Shown piece after piece: positions 1,014-21,700 of a stretch of DNA of 64,000 bases (position 1 is the stretch's first letter; every line of letters begins with the position of its first letter). Origin of the DNA: Ylistrum balloti (taxonomy: Eukaryota). The stretch is from NCBI RefSeq assembly GCF_031769215.1, contig NW_026782081.1, forward strand, positions 2,728,001 to 2,792,000, in the 5' to 3' direction. The notes below the pieces were generated by a model. The model was not told where the DNA came from. It searched no databases and worked only from the letters and a program-made list of their open reading frames with translations. The translations under genes were made by a program, and so were the position numbers.

Positions 1014-2854
1014 AGACTGGTTTGCGAGGGATTTACGTTGCAGACAAGAGGAATATCACTGATGCAATATCCGATTGCACAAAACACCATGAAGGACAAC
1101 TGGCGTCAGATGAACATCTTAGAAATGTATTACAAAATTGCCTGGATTTTGCAGACGACATTTGGGTTATTGAAATATCATTTTCTCGCGCAGGTATGAT
1201 ATAAAATTGAACTAATAATTAATCTTAAAGTTCGATGATTGTCCAATATTCTTTAGATCTACCTGTGATTGACTGCGGTCATAATTCATTTAGATAATAT
1301 CTTATAAATAAAATAATGATATTTTTACTGGTCAGATAATCTCTCGGACAGCTGTGCTGAAATGAACCAAAACGGTGAATTGAAAACGGGAGGCTGTACA
1401 GAGGAACGGGCTTTTGTCTGCATATCGCAAAGTATGTGTAACTGTCTATGAAATGAATGTTAAACAATGTAGCGAAAACAAAAACAAATAATAAAAATAA
1501 AAAAATAAAAACTAAAACAATCCGCGCCTACATGTTGTTCCAATCGTTTATCTTTGTATCTTCAGTAATTAAAATTCGAACATATATCTAAGATAATATC
1601 TGCGCAGACAGAGTGAGATCTGATTGAAATAGGGTCAGGTCTCATTTAGTTGAAATCATCTCTTTTTTTATGTCAAGTAAGCATCAATGTTAAGTTATGT
1701 TTGTTATCATTATACATCGACATAGATCAATAAAGTAAGTCGGATCAATGAAAGTGATTCTTTTTTTCCCCAAGAAAACAACCAGACTGATTCTTCCTGT
1801 GCTGGATTTCCAACTGTGACCAAATCGAAATCTTCTACCTCCATCTCTGGTAACCGGTTATTGATTATTGCAACATAACTATACGAAACATCTTAAGAAT
1901 GCGATACATTTTATTCTATACGTGATATATGGTAACAGGATATCATTGCCATTAGTTTATAAATAATGTTTGCGATTTTACTTTGCAGCAGGGCTAATAG
2001 GTGGAATTATAGCTGTTTGCATAATTCTATCTGTCTTTGTGATTCTTGGAATCGGACTGCTCTGTCGACGAAGAAGGTATATCATTTAAAGTGATACATA
2101 AAATGTATCGAGTATGAACATTTAATTCTGATACAAATTATAACCTGTTGTTTAATTTTTAAATATCAGTGTTTTTTATTGACAAGAGACATTACCAAGC
2201 TTAAACATGACAATGTATATACACATCGTGTGGTGTATAAATGAACTCAAATCTCATTTCAGAAAATGTGAGAAAGAGGCAGATTGCGTGTTGAACTCTG
2301 CGTATGGGCTACAAGACAGCTCAATAGTAGGTTCATTGCAAACGGAAGGAGAAACAAAACTTCAATACTCAGAGAGCTATGCCAATGCCTTGGAAAAGGC
2401 AGAAATACATGTGCGGGATTCCAAACATTCAAATATATATATAAATAACAACGCTGGAGATATTGTGACAGAAGAGCAATATGAAATATTTGGAGATAAT
2501 GATCGGATGTATGCTTTATCGGATGCTACTCCAGAATATGAGAACTACACAAATGATACTAATTCCACGAAAGACGTTTTAGAAGACTATTCACTGAGTG
2601 ACTCTATCAATAGTCCAAAATCAACTAATACTAATTACCGCCCTTTATCAAGCACAGACAATCTACCGGAGGAAGAATACAACACTTTTGCAAACCAACT
2701 CGATGACTTGCCACCTTCTGATACTTATGACCATGTTCATGACGTAGCAGAAGATGGATATGACCAATTTCAGCCGAGATCAAGTAACAGGTCGAATTTC
2801 ACTGAAGACGACGAAACGGGATACATGCAGTCAACTTTTCCGGAGTGTATATAA
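1014..2854 (+). CDS. Receptor R1: type-I membrane protein with degenerate CTLD, short stalk, TM helix and tyrosine-rich cytoplasmic tail (5' exons not resolved)
   Basis: Phase-consistent GT-AG exons: 1014-1193 (YVADKRNITDAISDC..GQLAS..NC..DDIW), 1336-1431 (SDSCAEMNQNGELKTGGCTEERAFVC), 1775-1849 (Ser/Thr stalk), 1989-2076 (TM GLIGGIIAVCIILSVFVILGIGLLC followed by RRRR) and 2263-2854 (tail with 14 Tyr, ends TAA). No convincing signal-peptide exon was found upstream. Confidence 0.8.
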
Positions 2855-5800
2855 TAGGTTTACTCAGTTGCAATTTTTTTCTTCTATGTCTGTATATCCG
2901 AGATGAGCTGACATGTAACATGAATCATAAAAAATACAAAGTGAATGATATATGTCATTTATAGATACTGATTTACTGACAAAATTAACAGTTTGTTAAC
3001 ATTGAAGTATCTCTATAAAACTGATTTGCTGACAAAGCTGAAAAAATAACAATCTTTATAAAATACTGCCCTGTCATGAGAATATATGAATGCAATAACA
3101 AATGTTTGAAATGATACTATTTGAAGAAGAAATGCAATAACTGTTAATATATCCAGATATAATATAATCGTAGAATGTTCTCCCAAATTCTTATGTTAAT
3201 TAATTGAACTTTAAATTCAAATCATCGACGCTCTCGTAGACAGTTCTGCGATGATTACCAACGATTTCTTTACAAAAAATGTATCATAATAGTGCTAGTC
3301 GTTGACAAATATCATTTGATCAGAATCAGATTAAGGCTAGATTATGACACTTTTCGTCTTTCACTTTTAATTGTATGCTTTTGTTAAATTGCTGATGCAT
3401 TGTTAGGGGTCTCCCTGGACGTTTCTATGGCACTTTTGATACTATATAATTAAGTTCTGAGGATTTCAATGTTTATTTTAAAAATATGATTATCACATGC
3501 AGGACTGTTGAAAATACTTTAAAAGGAATCTTGTTATCGTTATTTCTGGAGAAGTATAGGAAAGATCTTACTAAGAGATTTCATTTCAGAATATTTTATT
3601 GATACAAACAACCAAAAGGATTAGACAGCAGGCCAAAGCCTATTTAAGTCTTCTCCCAAGATAATACGGTGGTCAGATATAACCATACATACATACCTTA
3701 CATTACATACATACAATCATTAATTTATGTTGACAGACTTATCAATTTTAAATTATGGGAGACAACTCGATTATTTTAAGGTCTTTTCAGTTTACTATGT
3801 CTTATAATATTAAATGTGCATTACATGTACTTTCTCTATCATATAAAAGGGGTTTGGGCAAGAGTTCGTAACAAAGTTCCACTTAGTCCCTTACTGTGCG
3901 CTTTCAATTTTGAAATGCACAGAAAAAATACCATAAGGCCGACTATCCATCTTTAATTAGACGCTTGCTATTTAAAATTGCTTCTTTCTCAACCATAATC
4001 TGTAAAAAATAATTTAGAGGTTTTAGTACGTATTGATGTTGGAGGTGTATTGTATAATGAAAGGAAAATTCGACTCCACTCGACCTCCCTAATCTCTCTC
4101 TATAAATACGTACTACACAGAACTTTCGAAAAAATCCTACTATTCCTATTTGATTGATGAATTTATATGCGTAGTTCTCAAAAAGTTTTTGATCTTTACA
4201 TTAAAAAAGAGGAGGAAAGATAATCGATTAACCTTGCTTTGAACCAATAATAATGATATAGATTTTAATATCGATATCTCTCGAAGATTTCTTGCTTTTG
4301 AACTTTCTTGTTATATACAATACAATTTCACGGTTTTTATCAATTCAACTACGTGTCCTATCGTACTGATTTCGTATGATAATGTTGCCGTGATTAGTTC
4401 AGTCACTAATCACAATTTTTATGTGTTCAGTGCTGTATGTTTCACCTCTGTCATATTGCTAGCGATTGACCTTAACCAATCATGTATTTTAGCTGTAATT
4501 TTACCAGTATTGATGTGCTGTCTATGTTTGTATTTTATTTTTATTTTGACAACGCAGAAAAAATGTAGCTCCATTAATGAATTGAAATTATATTTTTGTA
4601 TAAGGTTTACAAGAGAACAAAAAACATTTCAAGACAAAAACGTGAAAAACCCTCCCAAAGATGTGTTTAAAGATTTTTTAATATTTTCAGAATAGTTTGA
4701 GGTGTTGTAAACTAAGAACTGGTTTCTTAACATGTCAACATTAAACACATATATAAAAACATTTGGGTTAGAACATTAACGGACACATAAAATGAGAGAG
4801 CCGCTCAATTAGGCGTATATATGATGCTTAGGTTTAAATATACATGTACATTTAGACTACCTGTGCGGATAGATTAGAGGTTCAGTTGTTTTTTGAGTGT
4901 GCAATTAAGAGGTTAAAAATCAAAATAAATTAAAAAACATAAAATTAAATAAAAAATGCGCATATAATGAATTGCGGTTAACGGTGTATTACGTGTTTTA
5001 ATAACGTTTTTTTACCATTAGCATTTCAAATTACATCGTTTCATAAAGTACTTTCACACACGTTTTCCTAAGGCAAATCACACTCTTCACATGCCTAATT
5101 AACTGGGAAATGTCCCCTTATGACCTCGTGCGGGCAAATGTCAAATTCAGTTGTAATCGATGCTTTAATACAAATGAGTTTTGCGTTCTTCGCCGTTCAT
5201 CATATTCGCAAAACACTTTAACAAAAGTTCCCTCTGTTTATTATCAAAATACTTAAACACAACGTCTCAAGGTTTCAGCTCAAACTTTAAAATTGATCCA
5301 AATTTGTTAAAAAGGAGCGCAAATTTTGAAATTTAGCTCTGATTGATATCCAATTGACTTTAAAAGATAAAATTGTCGTTTTACGGGGTGTTATCAACAC
5401 CATCATTTGCCATCCTTTTCAATCATGTACCAGCTAATTAGATATGATTTCGATACTTGCAGTGTCGGAGCAATGGTTTGTAATAACAATAATAACCTTT
5501 ACTAAGGTATTATTTTTTGTTGTCGTTTTCAGTTTTCATGCCAATAAAGAATTAAATTAATTGAATGAACGTTATTGTATTGTATATAATGTTGAATTGG
5601 AGTTCTACTCATTGTTGCGACAGTAACACATTTTCGTTTATTATTCCCGATATCAGGAAAGCATGAAAATTTTAAATTGTCTTAATTGTTTATATCGACA
5701 TTACCTTATACAATGACGCCAAGGTTGTTATTAGTTAGAAGGTTATTTAAAACATCATCAAACAGGAAAGATAATAAAAAATTATTCAGTGTAGAACTTT

Positions 5801-6790
5801 AGATGAACCATTAAAGTGCTTATGCCCTATGATTCTTTAACGACAAAAAAAAAAAAAAAAAAAAAAACCCACCAAACATACTCACAACATGTACTGCATT
5901 ACGTAAGCAGTGCTTCTTATAGATATGAGAAAATATATTTCGATCCATGATGATCAAATGACTGAATTAATCATATTGCAGGTTGACATGTATATACTGT
6001 AGTTAACACACAGTAGTGTAAAACGTACTAAACCCAATTCACAAGAAGCCGTTTCGTTCCCGTAAAAATAATGGGATTTATTTGCTATTAAACAATATGT
6101 AGGACGACCATGGATTCTGATTCTGCCAGAAGACAATGTAAATGAAAACGTATCATTCCAAAATATATTGGCTTCTTTTGTACCAAAAGCGAAGTGTGAT
6201 AAAGACGTCATAACATACTTGAACTCTAAAACTGTCCTATCTATGTCTGTTTTTAAGTTATATTGCTATGAATTCCAATGGCGGTATCCTGCCTGCTTCC
6301 GACCCTCGTCTGTGCCAGCCAAATATCGAAGAGAAGTCATACATTAACCAACTAAACTCAATATTTTAAACCTGAATTCTGTTAGCTTCCACTACTTTAT
6401 AAAAATCATGTATATAGTAAGTGATTTGTTACTTTTTGAATGGTATAAAGTATATGTATATATCCTTCCCTATCTTTTAGTTGAATTTATTTCGTAATTA
6501 TTAGAATCTCGCTCCAATGAACATATCAATCGTGAAGTTGAAAAAAATATTCATGAACCCATATCGACGAGGTTTTAGTTCGTGGACTGAATACATTGTA
6601 CATTTCAAATCAATCAAATCAGTTTAAAGAAAAATCTTCCATTTATTCGGGTTATCTAGAAAACAAAAACATTATAAAACTTGAAAACATATTAAAAGTG
6701 ACTATTTGAAAAGCAAATAAGATGTATGGTCACAACATTTGCTGGGTAAAATTACAATATATGATTCAGCACTTTTTCAATGTCATTTAT

Positions 6791-9700
6791 CTAAAGAGGA
6801 AGATCAGGATTTGTATGACCAGATATGTCGTAATCTGTTTCATTTTCAGTTCCCAAATTCAGAAGACCGTATCCGTCGGTCTCGACATGATCGTAGGGAC
6901 TAGCAGCTGCTTCATCAGTCATTGCTTTTTTCATATCCGCAAACGTATTATAGATACCGGGTGGTATTTCTGGACGAGAACACAGTGTATAGCCACCATT
7001 ACGCGATTCGGTATTACTCGGAGATGAGGAACATGGTATAAAACGATCATTTTCCTTTGCTAATGTGGATGTTTTATCATCAGTTTGAACCTTGGCGGGC
7101 TGTGTTGCTAGCCTACCACTCATATCGAAGTAACCCGTTGAAGTATTCCTAACCTGGATGTATGGGTTTCCTTTGTTGGCCTTAGTTTCATTCTGTTCTG
7201 ATTTGTCATAACCCGTAGTAATAATGGCATAGTCTGGTTCAAGCGCAGCACAGCTGTTTATGTAAGGATTTTCGTTGAGAGGAATATTCGTATCGTATGC
7301 ATTATTGAGAAATGAATGCAATCCTGAACTTGCTGTGTTGTTATTTGCGTTCCATTTCCGCTTTCTACAAATAAAATGATCAAACCTAATAAATGATAAA
7401 GATATGAAAGCCAGTTTATAACATTATTATCTTATTTGGATATCTTGATGTTTAATAATTATGTTTTACCATTTATTTTTATTAATTGATGAGTATTATG
7501 TTTATCACATATTATCCTTTATTTGTGTTTCCTCAATGTATTTAACTTTGATTTTACTAATTTACAAAAGAGCTTGTCGAATAGTGTTCGTTTATCTGAC
7601 CTAAACAGTACCTTCTGTGTACAATGGCAGATAATGTAGTGCCGATGGCGAGAAGAAGAGTGAATATAGCGACTATCGTCCATATCATTGCTGAAATTAA
7701 ACAAAATCATTTATGTAAACAGTAGATATTTATATTTCTACATAATAAATAGCTGTGGAACAGAGTTGAGGGAGAAAATGATAAAAAGACCGAATACAAT
7801 GGCAATATACATCACAGCTGTATTCCAGCTCTAATTAGGAAACAACTGTTTTTTATTATCCTTAATAAAGACAATCTACGTGTTAACAGAAAGAAATGTA
7901 AGTTCATGGTATTTCTAAACCTATGCAATACGATATTAGTTACGTTGGATACAAGCTTACCTGCATTGGATGCTGTATCCTGTTTAAAAGTTTTTTCTAA
8001 TAGGAAATTTTTACAAGATGTCCCATCAATGTCGTTACCTGGGTGTAAATATAAAATACTGTATGTATATCATGATATATAGTGTGTAATCCGAAATTCT
8101 TAAAGTTTATCATTCATAAAATGAAGGTTCTAAACAAAGAAATCATACTTAAACACGATGCCTGTTTTGCCATGGATGAACTACCATTCCAGTATTTTCT
8201 AATCAAGCTAAAAGAATATACGATATCAATATTTCAATTTCGAAGGTTGACGTATAAATTAGTAAGTGGAAATTCATTTAACTTTTTACTCATGTAAGTA
8301 GTATCGAAACATTTCATTTAGCTGGTAATTTCAATTGAATAGAAGCGCTTTTAATATAACATTTAAAAGATTCAATCTTATTTATGACCAAGTGCTAAAT
8401 AAAAGACCTTGTTACCATCGTTCGTATGTCCTTTACATAATCTCCTAACCATTTTGTCACAATATTTTCCTATTGTATGTATAGAATAATAGTACTGCCG
8501 AACCGAATCAGTACCATCTCGTACACTCCATCAGCCAGTATTAACATGCTTTCGCCAGTCATTTGTCTTATGACAGTGTTGTCTTTGAAACGTCAATCTT
8601 AAATCTTCTACTGATTGTATTATATGAATTGGCATCCTTCACATATAAGAAGCTTTTTATGTGATTTATCAAGATTTCGTTCTGGTATTAAATATGCAGT
8701 TGTATCTAATAGTAAACTTACGTTCGTGTATGCAAAGGAAACGTTTTTTATTACTGCAGCTGATGTTGTATAAATCACCAAAACTGACATACTGGCAAAC
8801 AATATCAGATTTATTCTGCATTTCTGTAAAGAACAAACAATATGATACATTAATCACAGGAACTCGGTAACTGAATTGTATTACTCTCACTCCAGCATTG
8901 TAATATAGAAACAAATGTTCCAAGTGTGAATCAACCAAACTGAAATACCAGATCTCATACATTTCTATAAAGAGCAGGTTGTTTAATGATTGCAATAATC
9001 CATGGGTATACATTGTCTCTATCCACCAATACTGATACGTATAAAAATATAAAACATTTCACTGTATTTTATGTTAGGTCATTGATGAAGGCTACCAGTG
9101 GTAAATGCAGCACCTAACATACTGCAGAAACTTTCATAGAAGTTTGAAACAATTGCTTACGTTTTTGATGGTTTGATGTCTGTGTCCAAATGTCGGCTAC
9201 GTTATCAGTGCAATTTTCAAACAGCAGTTGAATATTGCTCCATGTTGCTAAGCTTCCTTTCATTTCATCAACGCAGTATGTTTTAGCATCATTGTACGTC
9301 AACTGTAACCCCACGTACACTGCGGACAGCTGCTCCACTGTTCGATCAAGACATAGACAGCGAAGTCATTAGCAACTTAATTCGTCATATCGAGTTTAAG
9401 TAAATATGATTCACTGGAATTGTGTTGGAGTATAAATACCTATATGATATAATGTACTAATCTTCTCTGAAATCATTTTACCATTGAAAAGAACTGATTT
9501 GTAAGCAAGATATACGATAAATCATAAAATACCCATACACAGGTTATAGCAGTATTCTGTTATCGTTTAGAACATATACATACAATTGAAAATCCAAACA
9601 ACAAATTGTTACAAAATACTACCAAAAATATATTGAATTACCTGCAAAACAACGCTTGTCATCAGTATGCCATACAGTGTAACCTTTTTCTTCACAAAGA

Positions 9701-12700
9701 CATCTGTTTATGTAAGCTTCTGTCCGACATACAAGGTTACTTTGACATTCACTTGAAGTAGCACAAGCGCTATTGAATGATTTTTCTGTAAACAAAAACA
9801 GTACATAAAAAGCTAAAGTAATTTATCTAGTAAATCATGCTGCAATCACGTCTTATATGGACAAATGTTTTTACATACCTACATATGTCAACGTAATTGT
9901 ATCTGCTATAATATAACCGAAATCCTTCATTGTTTTTTCCATTTCTGAGTATTAAAAACATTCTTTACATTTTAATTGAGATATTGAATGTTTCGATAAA
10001 CTGACAAATTCTGGCTTTCCTTTTAACCAAAACATGTGTAATCTATCACTAATTTCTTGGTTACGGATAATGACAATATCGAGTAAAAAGAAACGATCTT
10101 AATTTCATACATCAGATATGGATGAACATAATTGCTTTCTGTATACATTATCGAATACTTTACAAGTGTATTTTTTCTTCCGAGTTTTGTCATCACATTC
10201 ATCTACATGCAGACATATGTTATATGAGCAGTATGAAAATGAACGGCTACTTCAGTGCGTACTTGTGTGACAGGTAGAGGTTGAGGAATCCAAAAACGTG
10301 TTATTCTCATCCTTACATTGACAAATCCTTCTGCCAGTGTACTGTTGGCTACACACAAGGTTACCTCTACAACCTTCTGGTATGTCATCAAAACAAGTAT
10401 CGTTGTAACGGGATTCTACAAAGAGAACATAGTCAGTGAAGTAATTTACAAGCAATACGGTGGTAAATCTAACAAAATACAAGGAAACACCATTAATATA
10501 GAATATCATTCAACAAATTGAATAACACAATAATTCTGCGAATTCAGAGAGCTATAAGTAGATATCCTTGTGCATGATTTTTGTTTTGTTTTTTTATCTG
10601 TCTCAAGCATAAAGATGTATCATGATACATGTAAACCACAATAGGTCAATCGAAATTCAGACAAAGTTTATCGTTGCTAATGAGATATAAATCAAAGATA
10701 TGGGCAAAAATAACAAAATATTGTCATTCACCAGTGTTCTGGTTAAACACGATTTTAGTTTTGATTGATCGCAGCTTTAAGGAGTTTTAATGATTACTGC
10801 TGATAAGGGCTAACAATTACCAATAGAAAACGTATTGCAGAAAACATATCTGCAGAAAATGATGAGTACCGCTCATGCAAGACCTTTCAATTTAAAATAT
10901 TGTTCTTAGTTAATATAATTATTTGACAGCATCTGTTCTAACTTTGAATAGAAATATAGATCGAATATATATTTATCTAACTTACTTGTCTTACATGCTG
11001 ATGCTGATGGATCCCAATACATGTTTTCCTCTTCGTAACAACGACACGCAGTGCCATTGTTCTGTTGACGACACACAAGATTACTTTTACAGCTTTCATG
11101 AGTGTTCTCGTAACATGTCTCGTTGTAATCAGATTCTGAAATGAGTTGTATTACTTCATTAATGTCGTATCTAGTTTTCAGAAGCGCAACCCCTTCGTTG
11201 ATTTCAAATAAAGATTCAAATGAATTTTTATCTGAGATTGCGAATACAAACACATCTATTAGAAGCAATGTAACCAAATGACTAATTAACTTGCACTATG
11301 CAACTGTTCCGTCCTTCTTTGATTCATTGGTGAATCTAAGGCCTAAATTTTGAAATCTATGTGAATCTGAGATTAAGTCAAAGTTAAGAATGGTAATACT
11401 AGGAAATTCTTAGATCTTAAGTTATCGTTTCCACCTTGAATATCAATTACAGTAATGTAGTAAAAATTACAAAAGTACAAAAAAACCCCACTATTTTCTT
11501 AGTCTTCTCCCAAGTTATGAAACCTCTTCAATATAAAGTCTTATATACTTTCCTCTTATTTGAATCACTCTCTCTCTTATGGTTATGCAAAATAGAACAC
11601 ATCAATTAATCAGGTGTTTCAGGATTCCATGCATTTAAAACCGCTTTGTACTCAATTGTCAAGTATGTATACGTATCGCATGTATATATTATTAGCTGTT
11701 AATGATGTTAGAGATCGCAATCTTTCAAAGCATCTATGTTGCTTGATGTTTCCTGTACTACTACGTGCCGATGTTCTTGCGGACAGGTGGACAGACTGAC
11801 AAAATCATATACATACACAGTACGTGGTAGACTCATCTAATCATGTTTTTAATCTGAATGCTTGATATTGACATGCTTAATTATTGTGTAGAAGAGAATG
11901 TTTTCAATGGGAGGCAATTTTTCAATGTTACATCACTCGGCCAAACTTAAAAAAAAACATAAGACACACAGCTTCAAAGATGCAGTAGAAATAAATGGTA
12001 ATCTAATCTGTTTTATACATCTATTTCGTCCTCTTTGAAGTATTACCTATATACTGTCCTCATTAAGCTACTTACTAGGTTTACATTCTGTTTGTCTATC
12101 GTCCCAGAACACGTCTTTTGAACATAGACAAGAGCTTGTATCGTTATCACAAACGAGTGTGTTTGCACAGTTGTTTTGTATAGTAAGATTACAAGACGCA
12201 TTGTACCTCGACTCTGAAACAGGCAAAAACACCGTAAACATTTAAAAGTAGTTATCAAAACACCGAGTTATCATCAGACATTAAGGAATCCTAATATGGT
12301 AAACAAATATTTAACGATTGGACTGGCTTCACAAATAGACATATGATACATATACGTATATTATGTTACACTTTCATAGTATTATAATATACGGGGGAAA
12401 GTTCTGCATTTGCTTTCATTGGCAGCATTTATTAGTAGAAGATATAAATGTTAGAAAAAGAAGGCTAACTGTTTTTACATGTCGATGATACACTGTCCCA
12501 GAACATGGTCGTTTCGTCAGAACAAAGACATGTTTGTTTCCCCTCTGACGTGACGCATATAGAGTTCCCTTTACACTGTTTTGCAGGCTCACATGATGAT
12601 CCATAAGATACTGATTAGAAACAAAATACATGTGTAAAGGTTATGTAGTTATTGTTTATATATATCCAGATATATATATATATATTTAGAAAGTTTTGTT

Positions 12701-15700
12701 TATCAGATTTATATTTAAATAAATACATAAGTATATGATTTCCAAACGTCATCTGATAACTGTATGAAATAACAAATATCACACAAGTTGAATATTGCGT
12801 AAAATGAAATAACAGGTTATGAGATGTTATTGAAAAATTACTTGAATCAGCAAAGATATGTATCAAAAACCATTTCATAACAAGACTGAAATTTCTGACA
12901 TCGTTATTCTGAAATAGAGTAATGAAACCATACAATTGGCAAATAATGCCATCAATGGCAACAATTAAATAACTTAATAGTCCTTACAACAAATTCTCTG
13001 TTTTCATTTATAATATATATGAATCAAACGTTCCTTGTGGAGTGTTGATGAAATACCATATGTATACATACTAACCAGGTGCTTCACAAACAACACCTGC
13101 TGTTTTACTCGGAGTGCACGCTGTAGCCAGTACATCACAGTCGATCAATCTATCCTTGGAGCTGTCACATAACAACGCCACTCTCCATGGACCGGCATAA
13201 CCTTTACCGAAATAGGCATTTAATTTGGTTATTCCTCCACTGAAAAATAGCAATAGCAATATATATATCCAATGAAGGATTGTCTCTTTTACTATCTAAG
13301 TTTACTGATACACTGATTCCAGTCAGGGATAATGGTGAAGAGTTATGAAGATATATGCATTGCATTTTGTATCAATTATTCGATGTCATTTGACAATCTT
13401 AATAGCAAAAGTCTAATTATTATTTTTAAATGATAGCATAATATGCTTTGGCTTCAATATATTACATAAATTATTGCCTTATATTAACTAGTAAATGAAC
13501 CTACTTGAACCCAAGTTGCTTGCATGCAACCCTTGACTCCACTTCTCCCCAACTGTTTTGACAAATAGATAACCAACTGTTTTCTCTGTATATTTCAACT
13601 CTTCCTTCGAACGCATCTTTTCCATTCTTGAGTCTAAGGTCACCTTAATTATAGATCAAAAAGCTAATAATGAGAGTTATGTTACATCCTTTAGAATATT
13701 TTAATACATATAAAACAATCTAAACTCACATGATATATTCCTCAAATTCTTTGGTATTGTACATAAAAATAGACGTGAAATTTGGCGCCAAAAATATTAT
13801 GAGGAATGTAAAGAAATTATCTCCAACCTTGTTTCGGTAAAGTTGTAGAGGGGGGCCGTTCACAAATAATTTCCACTTCAAAGTCAATGCGTCCGGCACA
13901 ATTACTGTTCTTGAGTATGTCGAATTGACATGCACTGATACTGCTTTCTTTGCCGTCACACATTACATTGTCTATCAAAAATGTCTTCTTCCTGCCCCTT
14001 TTTCTGCTTCTATAACTCCCAGCTCTGTAATTACGGAAATTCTTCCACATAAAAAATATCACATGGAACCGATTTTAAAATCAAAAAAAAAAAAAAAAAA
14101 AAATACGCCGAGAGCACTTATCTTTCCGAATGTCCTCATTTTCATAATAAGATATTATTGGAAAGGACCTAACATCAGTTGGATGCTATTATGTCGGTAA
14201 ACGATTAGACTATACTGTTAGGCTTTCGTTTTCGTTTCGTTGTCATACGTGGTAGAATAAATCTAAGTCGTTTTCAGTAAAGATACAGAGGCCTTGATTA
14301 TGAGTCATGATTTTTTGGCGTCATTTGCATAGAAATATTGAGAACATTAAGAGAGATTAAGTTATTGCATTCAAAGTATATAAGTTATGTGACATTTTCC
14401 CAAGTTAAAACAGTGTCATTGAAACTTATTTTTTATAATATACACATGAACTAGAGTTTCTCTGAAGTTATCATACATTAGAAATTGAAAGTCCCAGAAG
14501 GACGAAAGCGATGCGTCATGCAATTTACTGTATTACATTGCTCTATTTTATCAAATAATATCATTTTGTATTGAAAGATGCTATGTATTCGTATGTCTCT
14601 TACAAGAAACCGAGCTGGCGACAGACGACGATGACGTTTCCATGATGATCATGCCATCCGTTATTACAAACAGTACCCCATCGATCATTCTCATAAACCT
14701 CCAGTCGCCCCTGGAATTCGTTGATTCCATCCATGAGACGAATATTTCCGTCTGTAAAAAAATTTTTCACTGCAAATATCCAAGTCGATTGTTTAGATCG
14801 CCTATTAGTTTATAAAATTTATGATAATTACTAGTTTGCTTTTCTGCCCTTTAATGAATTTATTTAACTGATGTGACCCAACAAGACTATACATCTGTTA
14901 CAGACTTGTTTCATGATTATTTCAGTAAAATACTGTCAAGGCAGAGTATTCAATAGAGAGGTAAGACAGTATACCTATATAATGCATAAGTGATATGTAC
15001 TAAGTTGACACATTAAATGTCTTTGTATGCCGGAGTTCAATATCATTAACTCTCACGCCAACATAATGGTAACTCTTCAAAGACAACAAAACAAGATGCG
15101 TAATCTGCTTTCATAGGAAGGATCAAGGATGTTTTGGAGTAAGATCGATCTTCTGTCTCAAAACTCTTAAATGAAATATTAAATTAAATAATATTAAATT
15201 TAGAAATTATTCTCGAAAAGACACTAAGTATTTAAAATGCTAATTCTGTATTTGCTCAGAATTGTGAAAATAAAACAAAACGAGAGGGGACAAAACACAC
15301 TCACACAACATCAAGAACATAATTACATGTAAATGTATGTCATCAAGTACAAGGGAATGTATATCTATAGAGGTGTGACAAAAGATCACAAAGGGAAAAA
15401 CGACAAACATTAGGGAATGTTCTGAGATATAATGTAATTATTGGTGAGGTTGAAATGATGTAAGTTTTATTTTACTCACCACTCCACTTAAAGTTTGACC
15501 TGAAGGTATGTTCTGTTTAAGTAGGTATATCCGACGAGATAAACTAGTGCGCTGTTGGTGTAATATATTTGTGACGATGACGTGTCCTCATATCTCGACA
15601 ACGAAGTCTCAAGATATTCACTAAAAGTAGTCTGTATTCCTTGGTGGATATTTATCAGTATAACTGTTGCAATATGACAATTATATGGTCTTTATAAAGG

Positions 15701-18020
15701 ACAGCTTTAATGGAAAACCTATTAATTACCATCATGAATGCCAAAACAAGACAAAAATGCTTATGTTAACATACTACGTCGAAATACTTCGTAATCATCA
15801 AATTTCGTGGGAAATTATTTTCGTTAATAATTTTCATCTTCAAATTTACGTCTCCACGAAAACAGATGAAAATTGTCAGCAAATATAAATCTATTCATGA
15901 GCAAGATTTATTTCCGAATCGCGAGTCAACGGAAATGTTTATTTATATAAAACTACATGCCCAACGAAAATAGAGGATTTCATAGTAAAATCAATGTCGG
16001 TGATGAAATCTTGTGTCAAGTAGAGCAGCTAGGTTTTGAAGGTGAATGTCACCATACTAATGTCAACAATTATGATGTGGTGATGATCAGGGCTGTATAT
16101 TACTTCTCGTTCTATAAAACAATACTTTTCGGCTAGTTTTAAAAGAAATATCGAAAATATTTTCATTCGTAATACCTTAATACTATATCATGAACTTACT
16201 TTTAACTTTGGTATTGCTTTTTGCTGGGTTCCTGGGCACAGGGGAATACCAGGCAATGAAATAGCAGATTGTGCCGCAAAGTAAGCTTGATCGCTACCAA
16301 CAGTTGTTTTTAAAATTCATGTTACCGATTTTAAACCATTTATTAAACAAATTTTAAAAGCTCAGTGGCAGGAGGACTGGAATATTTATACCAACAACAA
16401 ATTGCACTCCATTGAGCCTGTTATCGGTGAATGGTCTCCAGGCTATAGAGACAACCAACGAGACGAAGTTGTCATTGCCCGTCTTCGGAAGGGTCATACA
16501 TACCTTACACATTCATATATGTTGAAAGGCGAAGATAATCCTTGGTGCATAGGATGTGATGAGCCATAAACCGTTAAACATTTTTTATTGGATAGCAATG
16601 ACCTTCTGTCTACTCGAGAATGTTTCTATCGTAACATTACATGTCTAAAATCCCTTTTTGAAACTGTTGAGATTTGCAAAATTCTACATTACCTGAAAGA
16701 TGTTGGTCTATATAATAGACTATGACGTACCATTTTAATCTTTTGTGTTAGCGTACCCACTTAAGATTTTTAACATTTGTCTTTTACCTTTTTGTTTGTT
16801 TAATGTTATTTCCTTTTGGATCTCTGTGTGTTTTACCGTTTGATGGCCCTAATGACATTTTACGTGTTGACAGGCCGTTGAGAATGTAATGATAATAATA
16901 TTTGAATTATTTCATGGAATTTACGTCATTTTTATTGGGACATAAAGTAATGAAATATTTCAATAAAATTATAATTTGTGAACTATAACAAAAACACAAA
17001 ATCCTTTGCAAACAATAATTAGGTGCGTTTGATTGACGTTTTTGCACATATCATAAACAAACCACGCAATATATAAGTATAATAAGATGTATATATACGT
17101 TGAATAAAAGCAAGTAAACCATTTCTTGATATTGAAGAGGATCATCACAAATTTTCAATCAGCTGCTAATGTAATTTCACAATAATAATATAGCAAAGTT
17201 ATCTGCAAATTTTCTGTCAGCTTGTATCACACTAGGAAAGAAACAAACAAACAGGGCCTAAACGGTCGGTGAAAACGGCGAAAAAAAGTTGCGGCAGAGT
17301 AGACAGAACGGGTTGAACAATCTGATAAAAGTTACTGTTGGGGTCTAGGATTTGCGTTGGAAAGACAAATAAAAGTGAAAATGACCAAGAATATCTGCAA
17401 TTAAACGAAAAGTCGACGAAATCTTGCGAGGAAATTCTTATCAATTAAGGTCGTACAATCCAAAATGTTTCGCAAATGTTGAGAAGTTTATCCATGTGCC
17501 AAAACAGGTGAAATGAACATTGTCAAAATCTCCATTTTTACTTTCCTGCTAATTAATTACAACGCGTATAGTAAACAAATAATTAGAAATCAGCCAGAAA
17601 AATAAACTTTCTGGTATGTTCAAATCAATTGCGAACTGTGTGCTGAGAGCTCAAAACTTCTATAATCTGACGTTGTACCGACGACGATCAAGTAGTTGAT
17701 TTTTAGCGTCATTGGATATCACACACACACACATCCACAAAAGACAAAAAAAAAAAAAAATAAATAAATAATAATAAAAAATCTATGTCATCAAAAGCTG
17801 CATCATTAACACTTTTTCGTTGAGTAGTAGGTTATTCCATAAATGGAAATCTGGGGAGCACCTACCCCAACTTAAGCGATGCCAAGGTTACCTGGAAAAT
17901 ACTAAAAACTGGATATGTCTTGGGGATAAAACTAGCTTAAAAGATAACTGAAGTAAACATACCTACTGGGGCCGCAATTATCCCGAGCTGTAGGATGAAA
18001 ATGTAGTAAACTCGGTACAT
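6791..18020 (-). CDS. Receptor R2: mosaic type-I membrane protein, signal peptide - SRCR - SRCR - 5x 6-Cys EB/EGF-like - degenerate CTLD - stalk - TM - Tyr-rich tail (~867 aa)
   Basis: Exons: 18020-17963 (MYRVYYIFILQLGIIAAPV), 14751-14604, 14024-13828, 13643-13505, 13239-13076, 12610-12470, 12213-12076, 11231-10986, 10415-10263, 9944-9879, 9785-9642, 9337-9161, 8823-8722, 8038-7961, 7690-7612 (TM MIWTIVAIFTLLLAIGTTLSAIV) and 7364-6791. All junctions are GT-AG and phase-compatible; the sum is 2604 nt with no internal stop. The 66-nt linker exon and the acceptors at 11231 and 9337 are the least certain parts. Confidence 0.85.
9642..12610 (-). other. Five one-exon 6-Cys EB/EGF-like modules of R2
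   Basis: Exons 12610-12470, 12213-12076, 11135-10986, 10415-10263 and 9785-9642 share the consensus (E)S.YN..C-x5-7-C..NLVC-x6-9-CxC-x7-8-(W/L)D-x5-C, for example ESDYNETCYENTHESCKSNLVCRQQNNGTACRCYEEENMYWDPSASACKT. The family label (EB-module-like) is inferred. Confidence 0.75.
13076..13643 (-). other. SRCR domain 2 of R2 (two exons)
   Basis: LRLKNGKDAFEGRVEIYRENSWLSICQNSWGEVESRVACKQLGF plus AYFGKGYAGPW..LLCDSSKDRLIDC..C..TAGVVC. Confidence 0.92.
13828..14751 (-). other. SRCR domain 1 of R2 (two exons)
   Basis: IRLMDGINEFQGRLEVYENDRWGTVCNNGW..VVCRQLGF plus FLIDNVMCDGKESSISAC..NC..VEIIC matches the classic SRCR pattern. Confidence 0.92.
16150..16900 (+). mobile_element. 3' fragment of an I-group (Nimb/I-like) non-LTR retrotransposon: RNase H end, Zn-knuckle-like segment and 3' UTR, in R2 intron 1
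   Basis: FCWVPGHRGIPGNEIADCAAK (RNase H C-terminal motif), then WQEDW..RLRKGHTYLTH..CIGCDEP*TVKHFLL. It carries in-frame stops, and its 3' UTR matches 47146-47420. Confidence 0.8.
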
Positions 18021-18755
18021 CTTGAGCGATCAGCGGATAATGAGTAAGTAAGGCAGTGTATCAACGGTAGATAGTCAATAGGATACGGAAGTACTTAGCC
18101 CAACATTGCACTCTAGCGAATTTCGTTCCTTTCTTTATAAATATAGTAAGATATCACGTACTTTAACAATACACATACTGCATCATTTGTATAGAACAGC
18201 ATTACACTGCTATTGTATCATTTGATTACGTTAAAGATTTTCCAACGCATGTGAGTCTTATTTTTGTAAGCTTGGCTACAGGTGTGAAATTACTTCTGAT
18301 TTTCCGATTAGCCATTGGTGGTTTATTTAGTTATGTTTATTTGTGTATTGTTATTTATTAGACATATTGTTGGTACCGAAATTATGAAAATCAACTGAGA
18401 ATTGGTGTTTATCACAATCATCTGAATGTAAATCTACATATTTTGAAATTTTCTCTTGAGATTTATTATACATTTTTGGAAGTAATCAAACAACAGCACA
18501 CTATACTAAACTTTTGGCAATTCACACATAATTTTATACGACTGGACTTCTAGGGAACACTTTGAATGGGCTTTTGTGAACTGACTGGTACGCAGTAAGA
18601 CACAGACTGTGATGGTTAAACTGGTTATATGTGTATAATCCTGAAATAATGATAACACATCAGTATTATTGACAAAAAACATAGCATATATCATATGACA
18701 GAAATCCGGCTATAATGTTTTACAAAAATTGGTTGATAATATATATCAATTGTAG

Positions 18756-21700
18756 TTAGTCAAGCCAAGGAACCCAAGCACCGCCATGCAGTTTTGGGTT
18801 GCTGGACGTATCCGCTGTTCTGTTACCTACATGTACCATCGTTTCAGCATAATATTTGAGTCTTAGAAGCAGTCCTCGTTATCAATAGCTATATTGTGCA
18901 ACTCACATGGATCAGACGGTATATGGAACAGATTAATACGATCAACTTCGTTATTATTGAATCTGTAATAATCATATTTCTGTCCACACTCCACACTTAT
19001 AGGGCAATGTCGACATTTCCCCGTTGTCTTTCTACGTGAAATATCTCGCAGAAATAAATGAAACATAGCTGCTCCAGTTTCGAACTTGCTGAAATGTAGT
19101 TTGGTACTGTCATCGAGCGTGTGATAAGGCGGATACCAATTGGCCATATCCGTTGCATCATTATGCAATACGACTAATTTGTAATCCCCAACACGAATCG
19201 CCCCTGTAGAACCATACGGCTCCAGGTTATGAAGGATCTCGTTACGGACGGGTTCACCGTTTGTTGATAACATTTTCCATATGTCCAGGCCATCAGTGTC
19301 TCCAAGGTCTGTAGGGTCACCACCTGCTGCAGAATAAAGTGTTGGCAGCCAATCGCAGACATGTATCAGGTTTTCAGATACATATCCAGTTGTATCAAGT
19401 AGAGGACTGTTAATGAATGCTACACCTCGAACACCGCCTTCCCACAAAGTATTCTTCATACCCCTGTATGGAACAATCATCATCGAATAAAAACATTATC
19501 TATATGTCTTTACGAAAATATAAGATCGGTTAACAAAAGAAAAAGGAAAAGGTTTGATAAAATAAGATAAAAATATGAACAAACGGAAAATTTACACAAG
19601 GGCGCCCAAACAATGAATTTTGATCATTTCAAGTGCATAATGTCACGTTTCCAAAGGAGAACAGACGTCTAACTGTATATCGTATAAGAAAATAGAATAT
19701 TTCTTAATGAAATCATTATGGCGACCAAATGAAACCTTCCTAGTTCTTTATCAACCTGCATCTCTTTAAACCCTGTGTTGTTAGTTTATCTGTCAGTGTT
19801 GTCGACATCTTGCAAAAGCGTTACATCGTTAAATAGTCCTATCGATTCAACTACGACATATGATCAACATAGGTTAAGAGCGCTGGGTTGTCTCTATCCA
19901 CAAATGAAAAATTCACTATAGGGAAATTTTCTTGTGTGAAAAGTTCGACATAAACGGCTAAAGGGGAAGAATATATCATGTCATTGATTTCCAGTGGTAT
20001 GCGCAATGGATATGGTCAATATTTATTATCTATTATCATTTATTAATATCTATTATTTATAGTTTGGCAGATTGTACCACGCGAATTTATCGATAGATTA
20101 CGATAATGATTATTATCATGAACACATCAAAAATATTCCTCAGCCGTATCTAATTGATGAGCGCATATAAGAGTATAATTACGAACACTATGTACTTAAT
20201 TAACGACACAAGAAATGAATGATTCAGGTAGTCTTTTAAGAAAGAGATTGAATGTTGAGGTTTGTTTTTGAAACATAAGAAATTATACGTGTGATTTTGT
20301 TTACTATAGTAAGCATAGTGCACAACCTCATCATGAACACCTCTTAAAAAATATATTGGATAATTCGTTATTCTTTTGTGTTATTACTACTCTGAATACC
20401 ATCATGGTAATATAATTGAAATGGCGAATATTCAAAATAAAGTTGTTTATGAGCAGACCACTGTGTGTGACCTTACCGTAAGGGAAAGTTATTCCCTGCG
20501 CCTTCCATATATCCGTTTGACGAACCCCCATTGTCTGTTGTAAAGAGGATGATAGAATCTTTGTACATATCACGTGTCTTTAGAGCATCAACTACATCAG
20601 CAACACCGTCATCAAGTGCAGCAACCATTCCTAGTAACAATGTTTAAGTTGATCATATTTGAAATTTGTCGAATATATATAAACATGTACGACAGGTCAT
20701 TGTATCCACAATTGTATAATGTTCCCTGTGTGGGGCCCTAAACATAGGGAGCAGGAATTCTACCTGTTGACCCTATTGCATGACCTTAAGAGGCCACTCA
20801 CTTAGAATATTTCGTCGGGCTTATATCTCACTTGACACTGCCAGATTTGTTGGTATTTAATTGAGCGTTTGCCCCTGTGTGGAGAGCTTTCTGTTCTATC
20901 CTCTGTCCAAGATATACTAGAAACTAAACAAAGGGTAGAAACTAATTCTTGCTTGGCATTCATTATTGTTGTAGTGAAACGATCAGTTTGCCGTTGTTAG
21001 TATGATGTGATCGAGTGGGATGTCTTGAAGGGGGCCACTGCATTATACCATGTACCTAGTGAGGTAGCACAATAAAATTGGTGTGAGTTTCGTACTGTCA
21101 TAATAATGCTGACACGAAGCCTCCAAAACACCAGAATTCAACATATGCCCAAATTGGGAGGCTTTCCTCAAATGACTGGCTGTTGGTAAGACTTTAAGCA
21201 ATATAAACAAGTTCTACATCAGCAACATTATCCTTTCAGAAAAATGTAAACAATGTAAATACACTATGAACATTGAATGTTATATCTGGATAATAAGTAT
21301 ACATTATCATTGATAGATATGTGCACGTTTATCACATAATGTTTTATGGCACCTTCTTTTAAAGTCATCTTAACACTCACCTCCGAAGCTTATATTTCAT
21401 AAACATTAGTGGTATTCTCCTATCATTGGAGACATGTTTAACGATACAATAACTTGGAATTAATCTGCGTTGTTTATGCTGTCCATTTACTGAGTTACTA
21501 TCTTTGAACACTGATTTTCAGAACAACATCTTTGGAAGGTAGGTAGTGTCTGACTGACATCACCGTATAAACGGAATATGTTCTAATTCAACGATGCATG
21601 CTTTCATTTTATCACCCATATCTCTGTATAATATACAGTATGTCATATTTAAAGGAGAAATTATAACAATACTTTCTTGGCATATGTACTTTCGAGTTTA

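What the first reader, a model, noticed from the sequence alone, without database searches (positions are those of the whole stretch)
1014..9337. Tail-to-tail pair of paralogous receptors sharing a degenerate CTLD-stalk-TM-tyrosine-tail cassette
Seen: the last five exons of R1 (+) and R2 (-) have similar lengths (180/96/75/88/592 vs 177/102/78/79/574 nt) and identical intron phases (1,1,1,2). The peptides align: YV..DA..C..G.LA..NC.D..DIW; SD.{1,2}C......G.L....C.....F.CI; and a single-Cys stalk (DSSCAGF vs GTSCKNF). The otherwise divergent tails keep an ordered cassette: R1 YNTFA..YDHV..DGY..ETGY vs R2 YNTFA..YDHV..DGY..ETDY. Inference: an old inverted duplication of a signalling receptor with a conserved docking module, possibly acting as a paired-receptor system like vertebrate paired immune receptors.
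Basis: partly seen in the sequence, partly recalled or inferred. Interest (0 to 1): 0.75.

Follow-up and report, generated by a model that had tools for sequence, protein, structure and literature searches.

The report
Scallop receptor pair sharing tyrosine tail
Two neighbouring scallop genes facing each other encode related cell-surface receptors whose inner tails keep the same ordered set of tyrosine motifs. The pair is real and old, but it belongs to a larger scallop family of receptors with this tail and is not an activating/inhibitory pair of the vertebrate kind.

Summary
Both models already exist in RefSeq for Ylistrum balloti: R1 is XP_060067992.1 ('DMBT1-like'), R2 is LOC132548250.

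The two genes are paralogous along their whole length. Both encode signal peptide, SRCR repeats, EB-like modules, a compact CTLD-like domain, a membrane span and a tail of about 200 residues rich in Tyr and acidic residues.

The tails align better than shuffles (1 of 2000). The convergent pair is also present in Pecten maximus. Orthologues of one or the other gene occur in Mizuhopecten and Argopecten. Synonymous sites are saturated while dN/dS is 0.06-0.3, so the duplication is old and the tails are constrained.

Across eight tails the invariant residues are mostly tyrosines: a PhixNxxY motif, one lone Tyr, YNTF, YD and a last Tyr.

The paired-receptor reading fails. The ectodomains are only 25% identical, there is no ITIM or charged membrane span, and both tails are long.

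New here: a collinear Yxx[FL]...YDxx...Yxx[FL] cassette ends at least nine further receptor genes of this genome with other ectodomains.

Most likely these tails are multivalent phosphotyrosine docking scaffolds, which is inferred. No RNA data were available.

The parts
1014..1193 (+). R1 exon A: N-terminal half of the compact CTLD-like domain (entered in phase 1, left in phase 1)
   Evidence: AG/GT flanks. Equals P0003 residues from 547. Similar to R2 exon A at z=12.2.
1336..1431 (+). R1 exon B: C-terminal half of the CTLD-like domain (the C...G.L....C.....F.C motif)
   Evidence: Pfam Lectin_C E=0.0048, 18.1 bits, below the 22.6-bit cut-off. z=7.3 against R2.
1775..1849 (+). R1 exon C: stalk with the conserved C-x-x-F
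   Evidence: The Cys and Phe are invariant in six sequences. Sequence similarity to R2 is not above chance.
1989..2076 (+). R1 exon D: membrane span plus the RRR stop-transfer; phase-2 donor
   Evidence: No charged residue in the span.
2263..2854 (+). R1 exon E: cytoplasmic tail with 14 Tyr, stop codon included
   Evidence: dN/dS against Pecten is 0.25 overall and 0.06 for the last 70 residues.
2678..2770 (+). R1 core cassette: YNTF, 12 residues, YDHV, 7 residues, YDQF
   Evidence: Conserved in the Pecten and Mizuhopecten R1 orthologues.
2855..6790 (.). Spacer of 3.9 kb between the two convergent stop codons (3' UTRs and intergenic DNA); polyadenylation-signal hexamers on both strands
   Evidence: simple hexamer scan only; no transcript evidence.
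6791..7364 (-). R2 exon E': cytoplasmic tail with 11 Tyr, stop codon included
   Evidence: dN/dS against Pecten is 0.24.
6860..6952 (-). R2 core cassette: YNTF, 15 residues, YDHV, 4 residues, YGLL
7612..7690 (-). R2 exon D': membrane span, phase-2 donor
7961..8038 (-). R2 exon C': stalk with C-x-x-F
8722..8823 (-). R2 exon B': C-terminal half of the CTLD-like domain
9161..9337 (-). R2 exon A': N-terminal half of the CTLD-like domain
   Evidence: dN/dS against Pecten is 0.13.
9643..12629 (-). R2: five EB-like cysteine-module exons, at about 9643-9789, 10288-10419, 10960-11136, 12059-12214 and 12471-12629
   Evidence: tblastn of P0010. Pfam EB module is weak here (20.8 bits against a 24.3 cut-off for P0010) and just passes in the Pecten orthologue (24.4 bits).
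13077..14749 (-). R2: two SRCR domains, each split over two exons, at about 14591-14749 and 13826-14029, then 13507-13644 and 13077-13250
   Evidence: Pfam SRCR E=8.9e-34 for P0010.
17970..18020 (-). Probable R2 signal-peptide exon, missing from the RefSeq model
   Evidence: Weak tblastn matches of the Pecten and Argopecten N-termini (E=5.6 and 0.053). Translation starts MYRVYY followed by a hydrophobic run.

Best explanation
R1 and R2 are two full-length paralogues of a scallop family of type I mosaic receptors. R1 has four SRCR domains and two EB-like modules; R2 has two and five. In both, these are followed by a compact CTLD-like domain without sugar-binding motifs, a short stalk, one membrane span and a tail of about 200 residues that is acidic and Tyr-rich. 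The duplication that placed them tail to tail predates the split of Ylistrum and Pecten. Their tails have diverged in nearly everything except a set of tyrosine motifs kept in order: a membrane-proximal PhixNxxY, one lone Tyr, then YNTF, YD(H)(V) and a last Yxx[F/L]. A collinear Yxx[FL]...YDxx...Yxx[FL] cassette, always at the C-terminus after a membrane span wherever the upstream part could be read, ends at least nine other receptor genes of this genome with different ectodomains. It is therefore a general signalling tail of scallop receptors, not a private feature of this pair. Inferred mechanism: ligand-driven clustering lets a Src-type kinase phosphorylate the tyrosines. The phosphorylated array then docks SH2 or PTB proteins. 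Candidate readers are a Syk-type tandem SH2 on the ITAM-like and hemITAM-like pair, and Nck-type SH2 on YDxV. R1 alone carries a Grb2-type YxN and R2 alone a PI3K-type YxxM, which would give the two genes a shared core output and different side outputs. Shown: gene structures, paralogy, age, purifying selection, tyrosine conservation and the wider family. Inferred: phosphorylation, binding partners and any immune role.
For: Gene models equal RefSeq proteins. Whole-length paralogy, E=7e-56. Pfam SRCR 2e-86 and 8.9e-34. The convergent pair is also in Pecten maximus, with an extra tandem R1 copy. A tail profile searched against 1.84 billion representative proteins gave only 6 hits, all from scallops or from one unlabelled run. 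dS is 1.3-2.2 (saturated) while dN/dS is 0.24-0.25 for the tails and 0.06 for the R1 cassette. In the eight-tail alignment, 5 of 11 invariant columns are Tyr, although Tyr is about 6-7% of the residues. Motif census: PhixNxxY 8/8, YNTF 8/8, YD 8/8, YxxM in 4/4 R2 only; a conserved NIY[AI]N (YxN) site is found in all four R1-group tails only. Wider family: R1 against the C606 tail scores 77 with 0/3000 shuffles reaching it. Iterated cassette profiles gave new loci at 6e-5, 5e-4, 4e-9 and 9e-5 before each was included in the profile. These cassettes lie at C-termini after membrane spans. In the separate C318 receptor family, Mizuhopecten orthologues keep YDHV, 10 residues, YDVF. Precedent for tyrosine-motif to Syk signalling in bivalve receptors: CgIgR (PMC6994640), CgCLec-HTM and CgCLec-TM1 (PMC12842671, PMC13027682).
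Against: There is no expression or phosphorylation evidence: no RNA run was on offer for this species. No canonical ITAM, ITIM, ITSM or NPxY is present. The +3 residues are V/F rather than the L/I that Syk prefers (my own knowledge of SH2 specificities). In R2 orthologues the middle motif drifts (YDDT in Pecten, YDNM in Argopecten), and dN/dS of the R2 cassette region (0.30) is no lower than for the rest of the R2 tail. The cassette is short and acidic, so some weaker family members (E 0.03-0.4) may be compositional matches. R1 against the C318 tail is not above shuffles. All these motifs also fit YxxPhi endocytic signals.
Confidence: 0.6

Rival explanations
1. The tyrosine motifs are unphosphorylated YxxPhi sorting signals read by the AP-2 mu2 subunit. 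R1 and R2 would then be constitutively endocytic scavenger receptors, and the cassette would drive internalisation rather than signalling.
For: YNTF, YDHV, YDQF and YGLL all fit YxxPhi, and every tail carries 3-9 such motifs. SRCR ectodomains are typical of scavenger or endocytic receptors (established knowledge).
Against: One or two YxxPhi motifs suffice for sorting, so an ordered array of three to six conserved tyrosines in a strongly acidic context is more than sorting needs. Asp at +1 and acidic residues upstream are typical kinase-substrate features (own knowledge). The conserved PhixNxxY and the paralogue-specific YxN and YxxM motifs are signalling-type motifs.
Confidence: 0.2
2. One reading: R1 and R2 form a paired-receptor system like vertebrate activating/inhibitory pairs, with opposing outputs from similar ligand-binding parts.
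For: The genes are adjacent and related. Each tail has its own extra motif: YxN in R1 and YxxM in R2.
Against: The ectodomains differ in domain number and are about 25% identical. No ITIM is conserved; the single SPYDHV match occurs in one species only. Neither membrane span holds a charged residue and both tails are long. The shared part is the tail, the reverse of vertebrate pairs.
Confidence: 0.04
3. R1 and R2 work together as one heteromeric receptor. Convergent neighbours would be co-regulated, the ectodomains would pair through the CTLD-like domain or the stalk cysteine, and the two tails would jointly build one docking platform.
For: The linkage is conserved between Ylistrum and Pecten. 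The stalk Cys is invariant. CTLDs of NK-type receptors dimerise (own knowledge).
Against: Pecten has two R1 copies for one R2. The CTLD-like region plus stalk holds six cysteines, consistent with three internal disulfides, so the stalk Cys need not be free (inference). No co-expression data exist, and no complex prediction was run.
Confidence: 0.1
4. The shared tail motifs are only a residue of common descent, or a compositional artefact of Tyr/Asp-rich disordered tails, without a common function.
For: The tails are low-complexity and acidic. BLASTP between the two tails gives only E=0.001.
Against: Synonymous sites between Ylistrum and Pecten are saturated, yet the tyrosines are invariant across eight tails from two paralogue groups and at least four genera. 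Shuffle tests keep composition and are still exceeded.
Confidence: 0.06

Closest known systems
Oyster transmembrane C-type lectin receptors CgCLec-HTM and CgCLec-TM1 (hemITAM, Syk, ERK, IL-17/TNF), as summarised in PMC12842671 and PMC13027682
   Same: Bivalve membrane receptors with a C-type-lectin-type ectodomain and a tyrosine motif in the tail. CgCLec-HTM has its membrane span at the C-terminal end of the protein, that is after the lectin domain as here. R2 (TDGYGLL) and the related C993 tail (EDGYGVL) resemble the hemITAM core.
   Different: R1 and R2 carry SRCR and EB-like modules in addition. Their CTLD-like domain is compact and lacks the sugar-binding motifs. The tail holds an ordered array of five to six conserved tyrosines, not a single hemITAM.
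Oyster CgIgR (five Ig domains, classical ITAM, binds CgSyk; PMC6994640)
   Same: A type I bivalve receptor whose tail has two spaced tyrosine motifs. It shows that ITAM to Syk signalling operates in bivalve hemocytes.
   Different: CgIgR has a canonical D/ExxYxxL/I x6-12 YxxL/I. R1 and R2 have YDHV x4-7 Yxx[F/L], which fails the canonical pattern. The ectodomains are unrelated.
Vertebrate membrane SRCR receptors with tyrosine-phosphorylated tails (WC1, CD163 family, CD5, CD6; PMC3511184 and PMC2681482 for WC1)
   Same: Type I receptors with tandem SRCR domains, belonging to multigene families.
   Different: The vertebrate ones are reported as group B SRCR (PMC2681482), usually one exon per domain (own knowledge). 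Here each SRCR is split over two exons. They have no EB or CTLD modules. Their tails, which are phosphorylated on tyrosine, show no similarity here (own knowledge).
Vertebrate paired immune receptors (KIR, LILR, Ly49, PIR, SIRP)
   Same: Linked paralogous receptor genes.
   Different: There the ectodomains are nearly identical and the tails opposite (ITIM against a short tail plus a charged membrane span that binds an ITAM adaptor). Here the ectodomains have diverged and the tails share the same motifs.
Multivalent YDxV arrays that recruit Nck: nephrin, vaccinia A36, EPEC Tir (own knowledge)
   Same: YDHV fits pYDxV. Several acidic YDx[V/F] motifs sit in one disordered tail. R1 also has YxN, as A36 has a Grb2 site. 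A language-model feature search listed the Orthopox A36R family as third neighbour of the R1 tail, at a sub-threshold score of 0.76, which is a lead only.
   Different: No homology. Binding is untested. In R2 orthologues the Val at +3 is not kept.
CED-1 / Draper / MEGF10 engulfment receptors (PMC6219719, PMC8092387)
   Same: Type I receptors with repeated small cysteine modules and a tail that combines an NxxY-type motif with spaced YxxPhi motifs.
   Different: Those have EMI and EGF-type repeats, a true NPxY, and in Draper a canonical ITAM. Here the motif is PhixNxxY without Pro, the modules are EB-like, and SRCR and CTLD-like domains are present.

Membership tests
Vertebrate-type paired (activating/inhibitory) immune receptors | Closely similar ectodomains in the two members | tested here: not met
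   25% identity over 828 aligned residues. R1 has 4 SRCR and 2 EB modules, R2 has 2 SRCR and 5 EB.
Vertebrate-type paired (activating/inhibitory) immune receptors | One member carries a conserved ITIM ([SIVL]xYxx[ILV]) in a long tail | tested here: not met
   The regex over eight tails gives one match (SPYDHV) in Ylistrum R2 only, not kept in the Pecten or Argopecten R2.
Vertebrate-type paired (activating/inhibitory) immune receptors | The other member has a short tail and a charged residue in the membrane span that recruits an ITAM adaptor | tested here: not met
   Both tails are 194-201 residues. Neither membrane span contains D, E, K or R.
Vertebrate-type paired (activating/inhibitory) immune receptors | Genomic linkage of the members | tested here: met
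   Stop codons 3.9 kb apart in convergent orientation. The same arrangement is in Pecten.
C-type lectin-like domain (Pfam PF00059 / CTLD fold) | Sequence match above the Pfam gathering score | tested here: not met
   Best score 18.1 bits (E=0.0048) on R1 exon B, and 15.3 bits for P0005; the cut-off is 22.6. No hit for R2.
C-type lectin-like domain (Pfam PF00059 / CTLD fold) | Cysteine pattern of the fold (helix-1 Cys to last-strand Cys, and the inner C...C pair), plus the A...C...G.LA and F.C landmarks | tested here: met
   Invariant A24, C28, G34, L36, A37, C87 and C95 in six sequences. Which cysteines pair with which is inferred, not shown.
C-type lectin-like domain (Pfam PF00059 / CTLD fold) | Long loop region with the Ca2+/sugar motifs (EPN or QPD, and WND) | tested here: not met
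   The domain is about 95 residues with no such motifs in any of the six sequences. A canonical CTLD exon with EPN lies elsewhere in the window, at 29818-30102.
C-type lectin-like domain (Pfam PF00059 / CTLD fold) | CTLD three-dimensional fold | tested here: inconclusive
   My AlphaFold2 model is unusable (pLDDT 37). A profile search of the Protein Data Bank gave NKG2-D (E=0.056) and LY75 CTLDs as best hits. The ESM Atlas model of residues 546-645 has CTLD-containing clusters among its neighbours at TM 0.64-0.75, and all the named nearest feature hits are Lectin_C at 0.81-0.85. hhalign against one canonical CTLD exon was not significant.
SRCR superfamily | SRCR domains above the Pfam threshold | tested here: met
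   PF00530 E=2e-86 with 4 stretches for R1, and 8.9e-34 with 2 stretches for R2.
Canonical ITAM (YxxL/I x6-12 YxxL/I) | Two YxxL/I motifs 6-12 residues apart | tested here: not met
   No match in any of the eight tails. The relaxed form Yxx[LIVF] x4-12 Yxx[LIVF] matches at the YDHV...Yxx[F/L] pair in all four R1-group tails (five copies, as R1b has two) and in 2 of 4 R2 tails.
hemITAM (acidic triplet, G, YxxL) | A single YxxL preceded by acidic residues and Gly | tested here: inconclusive
   EDGYDQF (Ylistrum and Mizuhopecten R1), TDGYGLL (Ylistrum R2), DGGYSCL (Argopecten R2) and DDGYDVF (the unlabelled run P0006). Leu at +3 in only 2 of 8. Pecten R1 has EGEYDHF.
CED-1/Draper/MEGF10 engulfment receptors | NPxY in the tail and EMI plus EGF-type repeats outside | tested here: not met
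   No NPxY. There is no Pfam EMI or EGF hit; only the EB module appears, near threshold.
Scallop YD-cassette receptor tails (a grouping proposed here) | C-terminal exon after a membrane span encoding Yxx[FL], 10-17 residues, YDxx, 4-10 residues, Yxx[F/L] in an acidic context | tested here: met
   R1 and R2 score 6.6e-22 and 6.3e-16 against the 12-row cassette profile. Nine to eleven further loci match.

The most novel reading that the evidence does not exclude
The YxxF...YDHV...Yxx[F/L] tail would be a scallop, possibly wider molluscan, signalling module encoded in the 3'-terminal coding exon. It would have been spread by duplication and exon shuffling onto a dozen or more type I receptors with unrelated ectodomains: SRCR-EB-CTLD-like, SRCR-TSP1, EB-like, and novel cysteine ectodomains with or without a mucin stalk. 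It would act as an invertebrate counterpart of ITAM-bearing tails, a multivalent phosphotyrosine scaffold that defines a previously unrecognised immunoreceptor-like repertoire. R1 and R2 would be two members whose extra motifs (YxN against YxxM) split the output.
Probability: 0.35. Interest if true: 0.65.

Novelty: new variant of a known kind. Interest (0 to 1): 0.45.

Why it matters
Bivalves have large, poorly charted sets of surface receptors, and only a few (CgIgR, CgCLec-HTM, CgCLec-TM1) have been tied to an intracellular pathway. A recognisable tail module with conserved tyrosines, shared by receptors with different ectodomains, would give a simple sequence handle for picking signalling-competent receptors out of scallop genomes. 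It would also give a short list of peptides to test against Syk, Nck, Grb2, PI3K and PTB adaptors. For the pair itself the result is more modest. It is an old, conserved, linked pair of mosaic SRCR receptors, already present as unnamed RefSeq models. Its shared core motifs and paralogue-specific extra motifs suggest a partial division of signalling labour.

Tried and rejected
1. RNA evidence: the run search found no RNA run, only one DNA-like holder covering 0.89 of the words, introns included. I did not use read laying, because contigs of a DNA run cannot show splicing.

2. Structure of the CTLD-like domain: AlphaFold2 on a six-row alignment gave pLDDT 37, so I did not run a fold search on it. 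hhalign against one canonical CTLD exon of the window was not significant.

3. Single-sequence genome searches with each tail exon found no paralogue, not even the partner gene. Only profiles did.

4. The strict DNA pattern for YNTFA...YDHV occurs only in R1 and R2. The looser YDHV...YDxF pattern is not enriched over its control genome-wide (8 against 5). However, 3 of its 5 in-frame matches lie in receptor tails.

5. The R1 or R2 tail against the C318 tail is not above shuffles. That gene joins the family only through the profile and shared motifs.

6. Pfam finds nothing in the ectodomains of C318, C710, C993 and C1033, so I do not call them CTLD receptors.

7. Literature searches for the locus names and for the motif returned nothing relevant.

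8. Complex prediction of R1 with R2 was not run, since I do not claim that they bind.

9. The joined (spliced) models built from the window were never sent to a search tool. Searches were done exon by exon by reference. After that I used the database proteins P0003 and P0010 that the searches returned. The exons were joined only once, inside a local script, to test string identity with P0003.

Full report
**Observation**

The window belongs to contig C224 (2,728,001-2,792,000) of a 648.5 Mb genome. The genome is Ylistrum balloti, a scallop: a search returned RefSeq protein XP_060067992.1 (P0003) from a contig of exactly the same length, 3,659,541 bp.

The five R1 exons are 1014-1193, 1336-1431, 1775-1849, 1989-2076 and 2263-2854 on the + strand. 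The five R2 exons are 9161-9337, 8722-8823, 7961-8038, 7612-7690 and 6791-7364 on the - strand.

Translated in the stated phases, the R1 exons give residues 547-888 of P0003 without a single difference. The R2 junctions are those of RefSeq protein P0010, LOC132548250. So the exon models are not new; they are the existing automatic annotation.

**Is the similarity more than chance?**

I tested each exon pair against 2000 shuffles that keep composition.

- The two CTLD-like exons are clearly homologous (z=12.2 and 7.3, 0/2000 each).
- The tail exon is significant (score 77, z=5.5, 1/2000). BLASTP gives E=0.001.
- The stalk and membrane-span exons are not above chance in sequence. Only their length and phase agree.

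**Homology is not confined to the last five exons**

- Upstream of R1, beyond the window's left edge, lie SRCR and EB-like exons (locus L007).
- Upstream of R2 in the window lie five EB-like exons, two SRCR domains split over four exons, and a probable signal-peptide exon at about 17970-18020 that the RefSeq model lacks.
- The two full proteins align collinearly: 25% identity over 828 residues, E=7e-56.
- Pfam finds four SRCR domains in R1 and two in R2. The EB module sits near threshold.

**The 'CTLD'**

The domain is about 95 residues long. It keeps the landmarks A...C...G.LA, DIW, and C...G.L....C.....F.C, and it lacks the long loop with the sugar-binding motifs. Its assignment rests on several weak lines of evidence:

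- Pfam Lectin_C is sub-threshold (18.1 bits against a 22.6 cut-off).
- A profile search of solved structures puts NKG2-D and LY75 CTLDs first, at E=0.056 and 2.
- ESM Atlas feature and structure neighbours are mostly CTLD families, with TM 0.64-0.75 for residues 546-645.

My own AlphaFold2 model failed (pLDDT 37). 'Degenerate, compact CTLD-like' is a fair description, but fold membership is not proven.

With the stalk the region holds six conserved cysteines. The 'single-Cys stalk' may therefore be paired internally rather than free. This is inference.

**Age and constraint**

- A profile of the tails, searched against 1.84 billion representative proteins, found six proteins only. They are from Pecten maximus, Mizuhopecten yessoensis and Ylistrum itself, plus one unlabelled sequencing run.
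- A region-restricted word search added the Argopecten irradians R2.
- In Pecten the genomic order is R1b, R1a, then R2 on the opposite strand. The convergent pair is conserved there, and R1 is tandemly duplicated.
- Exon sizes are also conserved.
- Between Ylistrum and Pecten, synonymous sites are saturated (dS 1.3-2.2). dN/dS is 0.25 (R1 tail), 0.24 (R2 tail), 0.13 (R2 CTLD exon A) and 0.06 (the last 70 residues of R1).

These figures support real coding exons under purifying selection. They partly make up for the missing RNA evidence: no RNA run was on offer.

**What is conserved in the tails**

In the alignment of eight tails, eleven columns are invariant: R, N, Y, Y, Y-N-T-F, Y-D and Y. 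Five of the eleven are tyrosines. The conserved set is:

- a membrane-proximal PhixNxxY, in 8 of 8 tails;
- one lone Tyr;
- YNTF;
- YD, followed by HV in all the R1 tails and in Ylistrum R2, HI in the unlabelled run, DT in Pecten R2 and NM in Argopecten R2;
- a last Yxx[F/L].

No canonical ITAM, ITIM, ITSM or NPxY occurs. Each paralogue has its own conserved extra motif:

- NIY[AI]N (YxN type) in all R1 tails;
- GY[FIL]DM (YxxM type) in all R2 tails.

**The cassette is not private to the pair**

- The eight-tail profile gave a weak third hit in the genome, on contig C606 (E=0.067).
- Its translation shows the same ordered motifs: GEYDVF, YDHV, YDVFQGR, a further Tyr, and a C-terminal LP.
- It aligns to the R1 tail as well as R2 does (score 77, 0/3000 shuffles).
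- That gene has SRCR and thrombospondin-type exons upstream. An AG consistent with a phase-2 acceptor lies at the same place, inside the RRR stop-transfer.

Iterating cassette-only profiles found further loci before each was included in the profile:

- C446 (6e-5), C471 (5e-4, two tandem cassettes), C710 and C993;
- then C424 (4e-9), C1033 (9e-5), C427 (0.035) and C103 (0.37).
- C318 came from a motif scan.

Where the context can be read, the cassette is always at the C-terminus after a membrane span and a basic stop-transfer.

The ectodomains differ:

- C424 has SRCR, EB-like and the same compact CTLD-like exons as R1 and R2. Its exon A hit is 5.5e-6.
- C446 has EB-like exons.
- C606 has SRCR plus TSP1.
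- C318, C710, C993 and C1033 have cysteine-containing ectodomains with no Pfam match.
- The CTLD-like profile also hits a locus on C509, at 8.5e-10.

The C318 family has two Mizuhopecten orthologues that keep YDHV, ten residues, YDVF, while the spacer between them changes.

**Interpretation**

R1 and R2 are two linked members of a scallop family of mosaic type I receptors, and their tail module is shared more widely. The most economical function for an ordered, conserved, acidic multi-tyrosine array is phosphotyrosine-dependent docking.

Bivalve precedents exist: CgIgR binds Syk through an ITAM (PMC6994640). CgCLec-HTM and CgCLec-TM1 are reported to signal through a hemITAM and Syk (PMC12842671, PMC13027682).

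Which readers bind here is inference from motif resemblance only:

- a Syk-type tandem SH2 on YDHV x4-10 Yxx[F/L];
- Nck type on YDxV;
- Grb2 type on the R1 YxN;
- PI3K type on the R2 YxxM;
- PTB type on PhixNxxY.

A language-model neighbour search placed the Orthopox A36R family third for the R1 tail. A36 is a known Nck/Grb2-recruiting tail (own knowledge). The score was 0.76, below the level at which such hits mean anything, so I treat it as a lead.

The main rival is that these are YxxPhi endocytic signals.

**The paired-receptor analogy**

The analogy with vertebrate paired receptors fails each defining feature except linkage. The ectodomains have diverged, there is no ITIM, there is no charged membrane span, and both tails are long and carry the same motifs.

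**Earlier scan note**

Note s1-262784 describes R2 as SRCRx2, EB-likex5, CTLD, membrane span and an 11-Tyr tail spanning 6791-18020. I checked this and it agrees.

**Limits**

- There are no transcript data.
- The fold of the CTLD-like domain is unproven.
- The weakest family members may be compositional matches.
Searches were exon by exon by reference, and later work used the database proteins returned by those searches.
- The N runs of the window were not touched.

Noticed in passing
window 17952-18035 (-): The RefSeq model of R2 (P0010) starts at an internal Met inside the first SRCR domain and has no signal peptide. A short exon reading MYRVYY followed by a hydrophobic run matches the N-termini of the Pecten and Argopecten orthologues and is probably the true first coding exon.
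   Followed up: partly
L007 9282-9440 (+), that is C224:2727282-2727440, just left of the window: A third EB-like open frame upstream of R1 exon A is not part of the RefSeq R1 model. Nearly identical minus-strand frames at L007 9193-9348 and 9577-9717 suggest a local duplication, so this may be a pseudo-exon or an alternative exon.
   Followed up: no
L009 and L010 (Pecten maximus LR736839.1, 28.54-28.60 Mb): The Pecten annotation splits each R1 copy into two gene models: an SRCR protein of 625 or 528 aa, and a separate tail protein of 207 or 470 aa. The 470-aa model also carries an EB-like module, the CTLD-like domain and the membrane span. Copy R1b carries an internal duplication of the YDH[FV]...EYDHF unit.
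   Followed up: partly
G000:C471:645707-646066 (-) and G000:C427:387941-388114 (-): Some family members multiply the cassette. The C471 tail has two tandem copies of YG[IE]L, YSHx, YDxF, YD[HR]x. The C427 tail of 307 residues carries about fifteen tyrosine motifs, most of them YDxx, including two YDHT...YDVFN[RK]K units.
   Followed up: partly
window 18863-26500 (-): Open frames that read like exons of an arylsulfatase-type gene (for example the 206-aa frame at 18863-19483) lie directly upstream of R2's first exon. I judged this by eye and ran no family scan.
   Followed up: no
window 29818-30102 (-): An exon of a canonical C-type lectin with WIDG, an EPN motif and the usual C-terminal cysteines.
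   Followed up: no
L011 (Logan contig SRR26445941_87844, 1027 bp): A genomic contig from an unlabelled run carries an R2-like tail exon with the same phase-2 acceptor. It reads YNTFA, YDHI and DGYDVF and ends early, before the last motifs. The species is unknown.
   Followed up: partly
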